From Selaginella moellendorffii (Eukaryota > Plantae > Lycopodiophyta), in NCBI RefSeq assembly GCF_000143415.4, contig NW_003314267.1, forward strand, positions 1,822,529-1,886,528: a stretch of 64,000 nucleotides of DNA, given 5' to 3'. The notes under the pieces are model-generated. The model saw only the letters and a list, made by a program, of their open reading frames with translations. It had not been told where the DNA came from and made no database searches. Position numbers and translations under genes: made by a program. Positions 7,641 through 9,269 of the stretch are shown piece by piece (position 1 is the first letter of the stretch; every line of letters starts with the position of its first letter).

Positions 7641-8804
7641 CTAGAAATCCAAACTCTCGACAACTTTAGCCCCGTCCTTGCTGAGCTTATGAACCGAATA
7701 GCCAGCTCGCAGATTTCCATGCTCGCGGAATCCCAGCACCATGCTCGCACCAATAGCTTCGGTTTTGCTCTCGTCATCCGTGACAGCCACAGCGGTCGGA
7801 CCGGCACCACTGATCGTGCACCCGTAAGCTCCCTGTTTCATGGACTGGATCTTCACGGCCGCCATCCCCGGTATCATAGGACTCCTCGCAGGCTCCACAA
7901 TGGTGTCGGACGCGAGAGCTTCGCCGAGGAGAGCAGCGTTTCCACCCAGGATAGCCGCAACCAGCGCCGCCGCCTGGCTGCAATTGGCGGTGTGCCTCTT
8001 GAGCTCGATCATCTGAGGCACCGCCTTTCGCATCTCTTTCGTGGGAGCCTCAAACTCTGGAATGGCCAGGACGAAGAAGAGCTGCTTGCCGCTGGGAAAG
8101 ACGAGCGGGATAAGATGGAGTGGAGCGTAGCTTCTGACGAGAACGAAGCCTCCCATGAGCGAAGGCGCGATGTTGTCGGCGTGGTACCCACTGACAACTG
8201 CCTCGGATTTGAGCCCGGCGTAAACGAGCTCCATCTTGGACAGCGGGCTTCCAAACAGCGCGTTCACTGCTACCGCCGCTGCTGCTGCACTGGCGGCGCT
8301 CGATCCAAGCCCGCTTCCCAGAGGAAGGCCTTTGCTCAGCGATAGAGAGAGCCCGACCGACTTTATCCCGAGGAGCTCCATGGTGCTCTTGCCGGCGATT
8401 CCAGCACAGTTCTTCAGCGGCTCGTAGCTCAATCGCCCACTATCACCGGTGATGTTTTTGATACGGACTTTCCCCGGCTCTACACCCTCGTCAACCTCGG
8501 CCGTGACAAAGTCCCCGAGGCCTTGGACGGCACAGCCCAGAAAATCATAGCCGGGTCCGAGGTTGGCAACAGTGGCTGGAGCAAACGCCTTGGCCAGCTT
8601 CAAAACTGGACGAGGCTCGGCTGTGGTGAGCTGCTCGAGCGGAGAAAGAAGGTCCAAAGTTCCTGGAGACGATGCTAAAGTCGTAGAACACCTGACAAGC
8701 TTTACTCTCAACCTGGTAAATCTCTTATGATCGCATTTGCTGGATAAGAATGAGCTCTCCCCATCGGGGATCCAGGAAGAATGGCGGACATGCGAAAGCT
8801 CCAT
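7641..8804 (-). CDS. HSK: Homoserine kinase with N-terminal plastid transit peptide, intronless
   Basis: FAPATVANLGPGYDFLG, GHMP motif KGLPLGSGLGSSAAS, HADNIAP, ISGAGPT. Confidence 0.95.
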   Translation of the reverse strand: MELSHVRHSSWIPDGESSFLSSKCDHKRFTRLRVKLVRCSTTLASSPGTLDLLSPLEQLTTAEPRPVLKLAKAFAPATVANLGPGYDFLGCAVQGLGDFVTAEVDEGVEPGKVRIKNITGDSGRLSYEPLKNCAGIAGKSTMELLGIKSVGLSLSLSKGLPLGSGLGSSAASAAAAAVAVNALFGSPLSKMELVYAGLKSEAVVSGYHADNIAPSLMGGFVLVRSYAPLHLIPLVFPSGKQLFFVLAIPEFEAPTKEMRKAVPQMIELKRHTANCSQAAALVAAILGGNAALLGEALASDTIVEPARSPMIPGMAAVKIQSMKQGAYGCTISGAGPTAVAVTDDESKTEAIGASMVLGFREHGNLRAGYSVHKLSKDGAKVVESLDF

Positions 8805-8852
8805 TCTTTCCTTGGGCTTAACCCCTAGCAGCTAAAACCCTGCTCCAAAACC

Positions 8853-9269
8853 CTAGAAGGATCTTCCATCGCTTCCAGCACTCGGCATTCCCTGGTAGTC
8901 AAGCTTGACACCCACCATGGAACTCACTGCCCTAAACTTCCCCCGGATTGCGTCGAGCTTCTCCTGGAGCTGCTCGTTCTGGTGATCCAGCACGGGGTAA
9001 TCCCTCACCAGATCCCTCAGCTGCTGGATTCCCCGCGCGGCCCTCGCCGAAAAAGCCGATTCGTCCCTCTGAAGCAGCGAAATCCACAGCTGCGCGCAGC
9101 CACCGTAGAATCCCAGCTCCTCGCCCACCTGGAATCCTATCTTGAGCCCTACTTCGCGGCCCTCGATCTCCCCGGCGATCACTCCCTCCGCGAAACCCTC
9201 ATCGAACCCGGCCTTGAGCTGCGCCTCATCCAACCCCACCGTCGTTGCAAAAATGTCGCTCTCTTCCAT
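8853..9269 (-). CDS. LTO1/ORAOV1-like protein (Yae1_N deca-GX3 motif; CIA adaptor family)
   Basis: Short protein with DIF near the N-terminus and a GX3 repeat GFDEGFAEGVIAGEIEGREVGLKIGFQVGEELGFYGG. Confidence 0.85.
   Translation of the reverse strand: MEESDIFATTVGLDEAQLKAGFDEGFAEGVIAGEIEGREVGLKIGFQVGEELGFYGGCAQLWISLLQRDESAFSARAARGIQQLRDLVRDYPVLDHQNEQLQEKLDAIRGKFRAVSSMVGVKLDYQGMPSAGSDGRSF

What the first reader, a model, noticed from the sequence alone, without database searches (positions are those of the whole stretch)
7641..9269. Candidate dicistronic LTO1/ORAOV1 - homoserine kinase unit
Two intronless co-oriented genes have only 48 nt between the LTO1 stop (8853) and the HSK ATG (8804). 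That is too short for a 3' UTR, poly(A) site and promoter. The spacer (GGTTTTGGAGCAGGGTTTTAGCTGCTAGGGGTTAAGCCCAAGGAAAGA) looks like a telo-box-rich 5' UTR. Plant bicistronic mRNAs with a small conserved upstream protein are established (CDC26-TTM3). Linking an Fe-S/ABCE1 maturation adaptor to plastid Thr/Met synthesis is my inference.
Basis: partly seen in the sequence, partly recalled or inferred. Interest (0 to 1): 0.72.

Follow-up and report, generated by a model that had tools for sequence, protein, structure and literature searches.

The report
Conserved two-gene LTO1–homoserine kinase unit
In the spikemoss Selaginella moellendorffii the only genes for the iron-sulfur adaptor LTO1 and for homoserine kinase lie 48 bases apart and are covered by one assembled RNA, and conifers keep the same tight pair, so this is probably an old two-gene transcription unit, still without single-molecule or translation proof.

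Summary
On the minus strand, an intronless LTO1/ORAOV1 ORF (9269..8853, 138 aa) ends 48 nt before an intronless homoserine kinase ORF (8804..7641, 387 aa). The window is Selaginella moellendorffii.

Assembled contigs from four studies each cover both ORFs as one gap-free piece (about 7577-9281). They leave the AT-rich flanks empty, so they behave as RNA.

The new result is conservation. The Cryptomeria japonica genome has the same pair, in the same order and strand, with a 35-nt gap. Transcript contigs of two other conifers show 57- and 55-nt gaps. The pair is not linked in Marchantia, Physcomitrium, two ferns or the angiosperms sampled.

A shared transcription unit is therefore well supported. 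Whether HSK is translated from the two-gene mRNA or from a shorter nested mRNA stays open. The LTO1 ORF shows no AUG depletion, its start context in Selaginella is strong, and an exact telo-box lies in the spacer.

I found no functional link between LTO1 and Thr/Met synthesis: LTO1 sits 5' of Ypi1 in Marchantia and of a formiminotransferase-like gene in angiosperms.

No searchable paper reports the pair. The scan had not noted it before, but it holds many other dicistronic candidates in this genome.

The parts
8853..9269 (-). LTO1/ORAOV1 homologue, 138 aa, intronless. It is the 5' ORF of the unit. It has ten glycines at 4-residue spacing (G21...G57, the deca-GX3 motif) and ends in Ser-Phe.
   Evidence: It is the only LTO1 found for this species (cluster P0001, 2 members, which I read as the two haplotypes).
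8805..8852 (-). Inter-ORF spacer, 48 nt (49 nt in the other allele). It holds a second in-frame TAG and no poly(A) hexamer.
   Evidence: (C inserted behind 8837 in 3 of 4 runs).
8848..8855 (+). Exact telo-box AAACCCTA (TAGGGTTT on the gene strand), overlapping the LTO1 stop codon, 44-51 nt upstream of the HSK ATG.
   Evidence: 8 in the window against 1.9 expected. The conifer spacers have no such box.
7641..8804 (-). Homoserine kinase (ThrB type, GHMP family), 387 aa, intronless. It is the 3' ORF. About 70 N-terminal residues look like a transit peptide. ATG 8804 is the only usable start, because the next in-frame Met lies inside the conserved domain.
   Evidence: 9 synonymous and 0 non-synonymous variants in the mature part.
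7577..9281 (-). Extent of the assembled RNA. One contig per run crosses both ORFs and the spacer without a joint: 7598-9209, 7765-9281, 7608-9281, 7577-9234.
   Evidence: table 8. Nothing was laid on 6900-7576 or 9282-9900 except a 52-nt repeat piece.
9348..9353 (-). TATAAA, 84 nt upstream of the LTO1 ATG. A possible TATA box, but weak evidence because the region is AT-rich.
7595..7600 (-). AATGAA, 41 nt after the HSK stop, next to the 3' ends of the contigs. A possible poly(A) near-upstream element.

Best explanation
LTO1 and HSK form one conserved RNA polymerase II transcription unit of about 1.7 kb. Transcription starts shortly upstream of the LTO1 ATG (contigs reach 9281) and ends about 35-65 nt after the HSK stop (7577-7608). 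LTO1 has no 3' end of its own, so its mRNA is structurally dicistronic. LTO1 is translated by normal cap-dependent scanning. My committed reading is that HSK is translated from the same mRNA. Ribosomes would reach its AUG either by missing the LTO1 AUG or by reinitiating after the short ORFs of 2-30 codons opened by the internal AUGs; all of these short ORFs end before the HSK AUG. Shown: the ORFs, the spacing, gap-free RNA contigs, conservation in conifers, and purifying selection on both ORFs. Inferred: that a single molecule carries both ORFs, the route by which HSK is translated, and that the arrangement dates to the common ancestor of lycophytes and seed plants.
For:: two complete ORFs of known families, 48 nt apart on the same strand; one contig spans both ORFs in 4 runs from 4 studies, with no joints and empty flanks, so the data behave as RNA; no AATAAA-like hexamer between the LTO1 stop and the HSK stop; the Cryptomeria japonica genome has a Yae1_N gene (with at least one intron) ending 35 nt before an intronless HSK on the same strand; contigs of about 2.1-2.2 kb from 4 samples of a conifer-like species carry LTO1, a 57-nt spacer and HSK; a second conifer species has a 55-nt spacer. 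Conifer genomes are very large, so the tight spacing cannot be put down to genome compaction; every internal AUG opens an ORF of 30 codons or fewer that stops before the ORF2 AUG, in all species. In conifers the LTO1 start context is weaker (G at -3, C at +4) and the HSK context is strong (A at -3, G at +4); the variants among runs are nearly all synonymous in both ORFs outside the transit peptide; these are the only LTO1 and HSK genes seen for the species.
Against: Contigs cannot show a single molecule (stated). The LTO1 ORF has 5 internal AUGs and no depletion (6 observed against 6.4 in synonymous-codon shuffles). The Selaginella LTO1 AUG is in a strong context (A at -3, G at +4). These features differ from those reported for algal dicistrons translated by leaky scanning (PMC11291117). 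Reinitiation after 138 codons is normally inefficient (same paper, and general knowledge). An exact telo-box lies 44-51 nt upstream of the HSK ATG, and a similar near-match lies about 30 nt upstream of the LTO1 ATG, which hints at a separate HSK start site. The conifer spacer is no better conserved than synonymous sites (82.5% against 89-91%).
Confidence: 0.5

Rival explanations
1. Nested transcripts. The LTO1 mRNA still runs through HSK to the shared 3' end, but HSK protein comes mainly from a shorter capped mRNA that starts in the last part of the LTO1 ORF or in the spacer. The HSK promoter would lie inside the LTO1 coding sequence. The pair stays together because the promoter and the upstream gene overlap.
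For:: an exact telo-box at 8848-8855, a motif typical of plant promoter-proximal and 5'-UTR regions, enriched 4-fold in this window; a similar TAGGGTT lies about 30 nt upstream of the LTO1 ATG, so each ORF has such a box in front of it; there is no AUG depletion and the LTO1 Kozak context in Selaginella is strong, so few scanning ribosomes should reach the HSK AUG. HSK is an essential enzyme that needs reliable expression; the conifer HSK occurs in 31 collection blocks whose longest contig is under 2 kb and in 14 with 2-5 kb. This is compatible with shorter HSK mRNAs, but also with fragmented assembly.
Against: No contig in any of the 4 Selaginella runs starts or breaks near the spacer, but assembly would hide a nested RNA. 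The conifer spacers hold no telo-box. Conservation over such a span fits both readings.
Confidence: 0.4
2. Two ordinary, independent but overlapping genes. LTO1 mRNAs are polyadenylated inside the HSK ORF, HSK mRNAs start inside LTO1, and no functional spanning RNA exists. Assembly merged the two.
For: One search's own caveat: a contig across two genes does not show a single transcript.
Against: There is no poly(A)-type hexamer or AT-rich stretch inside the G+C-rich HSK ORF. A poly(A) site inside a conserved coding sequence would have to persist in both lycophytes and conifers. Ten contigs from ten samples (4 Selaginella, 6 conifer) all run through the junction.
Confidence: 0.07
3. Stop-codon readthrough or a frameshift makes an LTO1-HSK fusion protein.
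For: The two ORFs are in the same frame in the window allele.
Against: Two in-frame TAG codons separate them. A 1-nt indel polymorphism in the spacer changes the frame in 3 of 4 runs. The frame offset differs in the second conifer. A fusion would bury the C-terminal Ser-Phe of LTO1 and the N-terminal transit peptide of HSK.
Confidence: 0.01

Closest known systems
CDC26-TTM3 bicistronic transcript of land plants and green algae (Lorenzo-Orts et al. 2019, as summarised in PMC11291117)
   Same: A small conserved housekeeping protein is encoded 5' of an unrelated enzyme on the same strand with a short gap, and the arrangement is conserved across distant plant lineages. The long stretch after the first stop codon makes the mRNA a likely target of nonsense-mediated decay.
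   Different: CDC26 is 65 aa, whereas LTO1 is 138-146 aa with 5-6 internal AUGs. CDC26-TTM3 is backed by experiments on transcript and translation; here there are only assembled contigs. LTO1-HSK has a patchy distribution: present in a lycophyte and conifers, not linked in Marchantia, Physcomitrium, two ferns or the angiosperms sampled.
Exclusively polycistronic nuclear genes of green algae (PMC7896298; PMC11291117)
   Same: Two complete ORFs lie on one polyadenylated RNA, the spacers are tens of nucleotides, and ORF1 is a real protein rather than a regulatory uORF.
   Different: The algal loci show short 5' UTRs, weak ORF1 Kozak sequences and a bias against extra AUGs in ORF1, which point to leaky scanning. 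Selaginella LTO1 has a strong start context and no AUG depletion. Neither LTO1 nor HSK appears in the supplementary files held for the 2024 study.
Readthrough polycistronic transcripts of Arabidopsis (PMC9768141, abstract only)
   Same: The RNA spans two neighbouring genes and is probably sensitive to nonsense-mediated decay.
   Different: As I read the abstract, those are by-products of neighbouring genes and are suppressed by nonsense-mediated decay. Here the upstream gene appears to have no 3' end of its own, and the layout is conserved between lycophytes and conifers.
Other LTO1 compound loci: Marchantia LTO1-Ypi1 and angiosperm LTO1/FTCD_N (At2g20830)
   Same: LTO1 is the 5' member on the same strand. 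In Marchantia a spliced RNA contig runs through both ORFs with an 84-nt gap.
   Different: The downstream partner differs. In angiosperms the partner lies about 1.4 kb away and is sometimes annotated as a fusion (P0201; PMC9618717 and PMC3223725 for At2g20830).

Membership tests
LTO1/ORAOV1 (deca-GX3 adaptor of the cytosolic Fe-S assembly pathway) | Yae1_N domain with ten glycines at GX3 spacing | tested here: met
   Pfam Yae1_N 28.9 bits (cut-off 27.5). G at residues 21, 25, 29, 33, 37, 41, 45, 49, 53 and 57.
LTO1/ORAOV1 (deca-GX3 adaptor of the cytosolic Fe-S assembly pathway) | C-terminal aromatic recognition signal [LIM]-[DES]-[WF]-COOH for the CIA targeting complex (PMC10245660) | tested here: inconclusive
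   The protein ends in Arg-Ser-Phe. The last two positions fit and the antepenultimate does not. Plant homologues mostly end in x-[ES]-F. The paper says conservation is limited to the last two positions.
LTO1/ORAOV1 (deca-GX3 adaptor of the cytosolic Fe-S assembly pathway) | Closest relatives are LTO1 rather than YAE1 proteins | tested here: met
   hits at 40-55% identity over more than 90% of the length are named 'protein LTO1 homolog' or 'oral cancer overexpressed protein 1'. These names come from the source databases and were not tested.
LTO1/ORAOV1 (deca-GX3 adaptor of the cytosolic Fe-S assembly pathway) | Binds YAE1 and recruits ABCE1/Rli1 for Fe-S insertion | not testable with these tools
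   This needs biochemistry. No related solved structure was found.
Homoserine kinase (ThrB, GHMP kinase superfamily) | Scores above the curated cut-off of the equivalog models, with both GHMP N and C domains | tested here: met
   NF002288 289 bits against 194; TIGR00191 212 against 168; both Pfam domains; the PLGSGLGSSAA ATP-binding motif is present.
Homoserine kinase (ThrB, GHMP kinase superfamily) | Plant type: N-terminal plastid transit peptide | tested here: inconclusive
   About 70 non-conserved N-terminal residues precede the first conserved motif, and all 4 non-synonymous variants fall there. No targeting predictor was available.
Functional dicistronic nuclear mRNA (CDC26-TTM3 / green-algal type) | Two complete, conserved ORFs on one strand with a short spacer and no 3'-end signal between them | tested here: met
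Functional dicistronic nuclear mRNA (CDC26-TTM3 / green-algal type) | Single RNA molecules span both ORFs | tested here: inconclusive
   one gap-free contig in each of 4 runs; 6 conifer contigs. Contigs are not molecules.
Functional dicistronic nuclear mRNA (CDC26-TTM3 / green-algal type) | The arrangement is conserved between distant lineages | tested here: met
   three conifers with 35-57 nt spacers. Not linked in Marchantia, Physcomitrium, two ferns, several angiosperms, or 21 LTO1 loci of unknown plants from JGI metagenome samples.
Functional dicistronic nuclear mRNA (CDC26-TTM3 / green-algal type) | Leaky-scanning signature: weak ORF1 start context and depletion of AUGs in ORF1 | tested here: not met
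   6 AUGs against 6.4 expected; the Selaginella LTO1 context has A at -3 and G at +4. Conifers and Marchantia have a weaker ORF1 context (G at -3, C at +4) but still 5-6 internal AUGs.
Functional dicistronic nuclear mRNA (CDC26-TTM3 / green-algal type) | Both proteins are translated from the one mRNA | not testable with these tools
   This needs ribosome profiling or reporter assays.

The most novel reading that the evidence does not exclude
LTO1-HSK is an obligate dicistronic mRNA kept for about 400 million years (my estimate from the lycophyte-seed plant split). The second cistron would be reached after a full-length, AUG-rich ORF of about 140 codons, a reinitiation-type route not described for cellular plant mRNAs. 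LTO1 would recur as a 5' cistron (HSK in Selaginella and conifers, Ypi1 in Marchantia, FTCD_N-like in angiosperms) because its product matures ABCE1, the ribosome-recycling factor. Translation downstream of the LTO1 stop codon would then report on, or feed back on, ribosome recycling capacity.
Probability: 0.12. Interest if true: 0.9.

Novelty: new member of a known kind. Interest (0 to 1): 0.62.

Why it matters
Few conserved two-protein nuclear mRNAs are documented in land plants; CDC26-TTM3 is the standard case. A second pair shared by a lycophyte and conifers would show that such units can persist for hundreds of millions of years, even in genomes with very long intergenic regions.

Its first ORF is long and rich in AUGs, so it does not fit the leaky-scanning rules worked out in green algae. 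That makes the locus a useful test case for how a second cistron is translated in plants, or for how a promoter can sit inside a coding sequence.

There is also a practical point for annotation. LTO1 is hidden or mis-annotated in several plant genomes, for example Arabidopsis At2g20830, which is filed as a folate-binding transferase.

Tried and rejected
- **Readthrough fusion:** rejected. There are two in-frame stops, a 1-nt indel polymorphism in the spacer, and a different frame offset in another species.
- **Pure leaky scanning:** unlikely. There is no AUG depletion and the first AUG is in a strong context.
- **Tight spacing as a side effect of the compact Selaginella genome:** rejected, because conifers keep the same spacing.
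- **Functional coupling of Fe-S maturation and Thr/Met synthesis:** no support. The partners differ between lineages and no paper links them.
- **Special conservation of the spacer between two conifers:** not found (82.5% against 89-91% at third codon positions).
- **Other lycophytes:** the Diphasiastrum HSK (P0062) is not on record for a context look-up, and no other Selaginella, Isoetes or Lycopodium LTO1 or HSK turned up.
- **Ginkgo:** its HSK comes from a source without contigs.
- **Ceratopteris and Cryptomeria:** their DNA was too large to fetch, so only gene tables were available.
- **Metagenome scan with the LTO1 alignment:** it gave 28 loci, none with HSK.
- **Contigs of P0060 and P0077:** their HSK 5' leaders contain no LTO1. 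P0173's LTO1 contig has no downstream gene.
- **Sequence search of solved structures:** nothing related.
- **Sigma-70 and terminator scan:** irrelevant for a plant nuclear gene.
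Full report
**What is in the window**

On the minus strand, an ORF of 138 codons runs from ATG 9269 to TAG 8853. A second ORF of 387 codons runs from ATG 8804 to TAG 7641. Exactly 48 nt (8852..8805) lie between them, and neither ORF is interrupted.

The first ORF matches Pfam Yae1_N. It has ten glycines at four-residue spacing (G21 to G57), which is the deca-GX3 motif, and it ends in Ser-Phe. Its relatives, at 40-55% identity over nearly the full length, carry the source names 'protein LTO1 homolog' or 'oral cancer overexpressed protein 1'.

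The second ORF has both GHMP kinase domains. It scores above the curated cut-offs of two NCBIfam homoserine kinase equivalogs. About 70 poorly conserved residues precede the first conserved motif, as expected for a plastid transit peptide. This reading is an inference.

The two ORFs form one G+C-rich island (about 0.6) between AT-rich flanks (0.23-0.36). An exact-sequence look-up places the window in Selaginella moellendorffii, assembly GCA_000143415.2, scaffold GL377571.1, where the two ORFs are called as separate genes. The only other Selaginella hit is a 99% identical HSK (P0050), which I take to be the second haplotype. These therefore appear to be the species' only LTO1 and HSK genes.

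**Transcript evidence in Selaginella**

No run is on record as RNA, but 20 small runs (18-57 million letters) hold 46-68% of the sampled words of the stretch.

I laid the contigs of four runs from four studies on window 6900-9900. Each gave one contig crossing both ORFs and the spacer without a joint:
- 7598-9209
- 7765-9281
- 7608-9281
- 7577-9234

Nothing lay on 6900-7576 or 9282-9900 except a 52-nt repeat piece. That is what RNA, not genomic DNA, would give.

Two contigs end at exactly 9281, 12 nt upstream of the LTO1 ATG. Three end 33-64 nt after the HSK stop, next to an AATGAA. No AATAAA-like hexamer occurs between the LTO1 stop and the HSK stop.

The contigs carry allelic differences. 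Three of four have one extra C in the spacer (behind 8837), so the spacer is 48 or 49 nt and the frame relation between the ORFs is not fixed. In the mature part of HSK there are 9 synonymous and no non-synonymous differences. The four non-synonymous differences all fall in the presumed transit peptide. LTO1 has 3 synonymous differences and 1 non-synonymous. Both ORFs are therefore under purifying selection.

The tool itself warns that a contig across two genes does not show a single transcript.

**Conservation**

This is the main new result.

- **Conifer species 1.** An HSK homologue (P0059, 67% identical to the window's HSK) lies on contigs of about 2.1-2.2 kb from two Logan runs and two JGI samples, each with a Yae1_N ORF directly upstream on the same strand. 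In L012 the LTO1 ORF is 353-790, the spacer is 57 nt and HSK is 848-1993. By BLASTP, P0059 is closest to the Ginkgo (84%) and Cryptomeria (81%) HSKs, so it is a gymnosperm and probably a conifer.
- **Cryptomeria japonica.** In the genome, a Yae1_N gene with at least one intron ends 35 nt before an intronless HSK on the same strand.
- **Conifer species 2.** Its LTO1 is 90% identical to that of species 1. In contigs from two further runs it shows LTO1, a 55-nt spacer and HSK.

Conifer genomes are very large (general knowledge), so the tight spacing is not a side effect of the compact Selaginella genome.

The pair is not linked in the following:
- Marchantia, where LTO1 and HSK sit on contigs of different length and something else follows LTO1.
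- Physcomitrium, where HSK has introns, no Yae1 gene lies within 5 kb, and the RNA contigs hold HSK alone.
- Adiantum nelumboides and Ceratopteris, where the two genes sit on contigs of different length.
- Several angiosperms, by the same contig-length criterion.
- Two unnamed species whose HSK leaders hold no LTO1.
- One unnamed species whose LTO1 contig has no downstream gene.
- 21 LTO1 loci of unknown plants from JGI metagenome samples, none with an ORF of 80 aa or more starting within 600 nt downstream.

One origin before the lycophyte-euphyllophyte split, followed by losses in ferns and angiosperms, is more economical than two independent identical pairings. I could not sample other lycophytes, Ginkgo or cycads, so this stays an inference.

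**How it probably works**

That LTO1 has no 3' end of its own, and that its mRNA runs through HSK, seems likely. I put it at about 0.8 for these reasons:
- The gap is only 35-57 nt.
- No poly(A) signal occurs inside the G+C-rich HSK ORF.
- All ten contigs from ten samples run through the junction.

How HSK is translated is open. A readthrough fusion is excluded (two in-frame stops, the indel polymorphism, a different frame offset in conifer 2).

Pure leaky scanning, the mechanism shown for green-algal dicistrons (PMC11291117), fits poorly:
- The LTO1 ORF holds 5 internal AUGs, no fewer than synonymous-codon shuffles give (6 against 6.4).
- The Selaginella LTO1 AUG has A at -3 and G at +4.
- In conifers and Marchantia, however, the first AUG is in a weaker context (G at -3, C at +4) and the second ORF's AUG is in a strong one.
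- In every species, all internal AUGs open ORFs of only 2-30 codons that end before the second ORF's AUG. A ribosome that misses the first AUG could therefore still arrive by reinitiating after a short ORF.

Against translation from the dicistronic RNA, an exact telo-box (AAACCCTA on the plus strand, 8848-8855) overlaps the LTO1 stop, 44-51 nt upstream of the HSK ATG. The motif is enriched in the window (8 against 1.9 expected). A near-match lies at a similar distance upstream of the LTO1 ATG. That pattern suggests each ORF may have its own promoter-proximal element. HSK would then be made from a nested mRNA starting inside or just behind LTO1. The conifer spacers have no telo-box and are no better conserved than synonymous sites.

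My estimates:
- Functional dicistronic mRNA: about 0.5.
- Nested HSK mRNA inside an LTO1 read-through transcript: about 0.4.
- Independent overlapping genes: about 0.07.

**LTO1 elsewhere**

In Marchantia polymorpha, RNA contigs from two runs are spliced: a GT-AG intron of about 0.9 kb is removed from the leader. They then run through LTO1 and, 84 nt later, a complete Ypi1/protein phosphatase inhibitor ORF (Pfam PPI_Ypi1, 2.4e-17).

In angiosperms, a formiminotransferase-like (FTCD_N) gene lies about 1.4 kb downstream of LTO1 on the same strand in contigs of an unnamed species. Nyssa has an annotated LTO1::FTCD_N fusion (P0201).

Arabidopsis At2g20830 is treated as a formiminotransferase-family gene (COG3643) in PMC3223725. 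PMC9618717, which calls it a folic-acid-binding transferase, reports it as the LTO1 homologue that co-purifies with ABCE2.

LTO1 thus sits 5' of an unrelated gene in three lineages with three different partners. This argues against a specific LTO1-HSK functional link. It raises the question of why LTO1 in particular does this. LTO1, together with Yae1, matures ABCE1/Rli1, the ribosome-recycling factor (PMC4523923). A connection with translation downstream of stop codons is conceivable, but it is pure speculation.

**Comparison with what is known, and novelty**

The locus resembles the conserved CDC26-TTM3 bicistron and the algal polycistronic genes in layout and in being conserved. It differs in three ways: the first ORF is long and AUG-rich, its start context in Selaginella is strong, and the distribution across plants is patchy.

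I found no paper that links LTO1, Yae1 or ORAOV1 with bicistronic or polycistronic expression or with homoserine kinase. Neither gene appears in the supplementary files held for the 2024 algal study. No supplementary files were held for the 2021 study. Subscription journals are not covered.

The scan's own notes hold no earlier finding for this pair. They do list many other unverified dicistronic candidates in this same genome, so the locus may be one instance of a genome-wide habit. I rate it a new member of a known kind. Its interest lies mainly in the lycophyte-conifer conservation and in the unsolved route of second-ORF translation.

Noticed in passing
L002:5001-5945 (Marchantia polymorpha genome); L003 and L004 (RNA contigs): Marchantia LTO1 (146 aa, genomic 5001-5441) is followed 84 nt later by a complete Ypi1/protein phosphatase inhibitor ORF (139 aa, genomic about 5526-5945). 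That ORF is not listed as a gene in the genome table. Two RNA contigs, spliced in the 5' leader (GT-AG intron about 4032-4946), run through both ORFs. This is a second candidate dicistronic LTO1 locus with a different partner.
   Followed up: partly
L005:761-3655 (also L006-L008); protein P0201: In an unnamed angiosperm, LTO1 (761-1189) is followed about 1.4 kb downstream, on the same strand, by formiminotransferase N-domain ORFs. Nyssa sinensis has an annotated LTO1::FTCD_N fusion of 218 aa. Two papers assign Arabidopsis At2g20830 to each of the two functions. The angiosperm LTO1 locus looks compound and may be mis-annotated.
   Followed up: partly
window 8837: A one-base insertion polymorphism (an extra C) in the inter-ORF spacer in 3 of 4 runs. 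The window carries the shorter allele.
   Followed up: yes
window 2425, 8848, 10624, 11869, 29153, 36697, 42107, 56684: Exact telo-boxes (AAACCCTA) are four times more frequent than in shuffled sequence (8 against 1.9). Seven of the 8 lie on the plus strand. The one at 10624 sits at the edge of the next G+C-rich block, as if marking another gene start.
   Followed up: no
window 9391-9442: A 52-nt piece of the AT-rich upstream region also occurs inside unrelated, more deeply covered contigs in three runs (3 mismatches, different flanks). It is probably a short expressed repeat.
   Followed up: no
L014:5001-7269 (Physcomitrium patens): The moss HSK gene is split into at least five coding pieces. 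The Selaginella and Cryptomeria HSK genes are intronless.
   Followed up: no
L012:1-352 against L051:1-237: The 5' leaders of the LTO1-HSK contigs of the two conifers (230-350 nt, with several upstream AUGs) do not align with each other, although the coding parts are 92-94% identical. The cause may be different leader exons, retained intron sequence or assembly chimeras.
   Followed up: no
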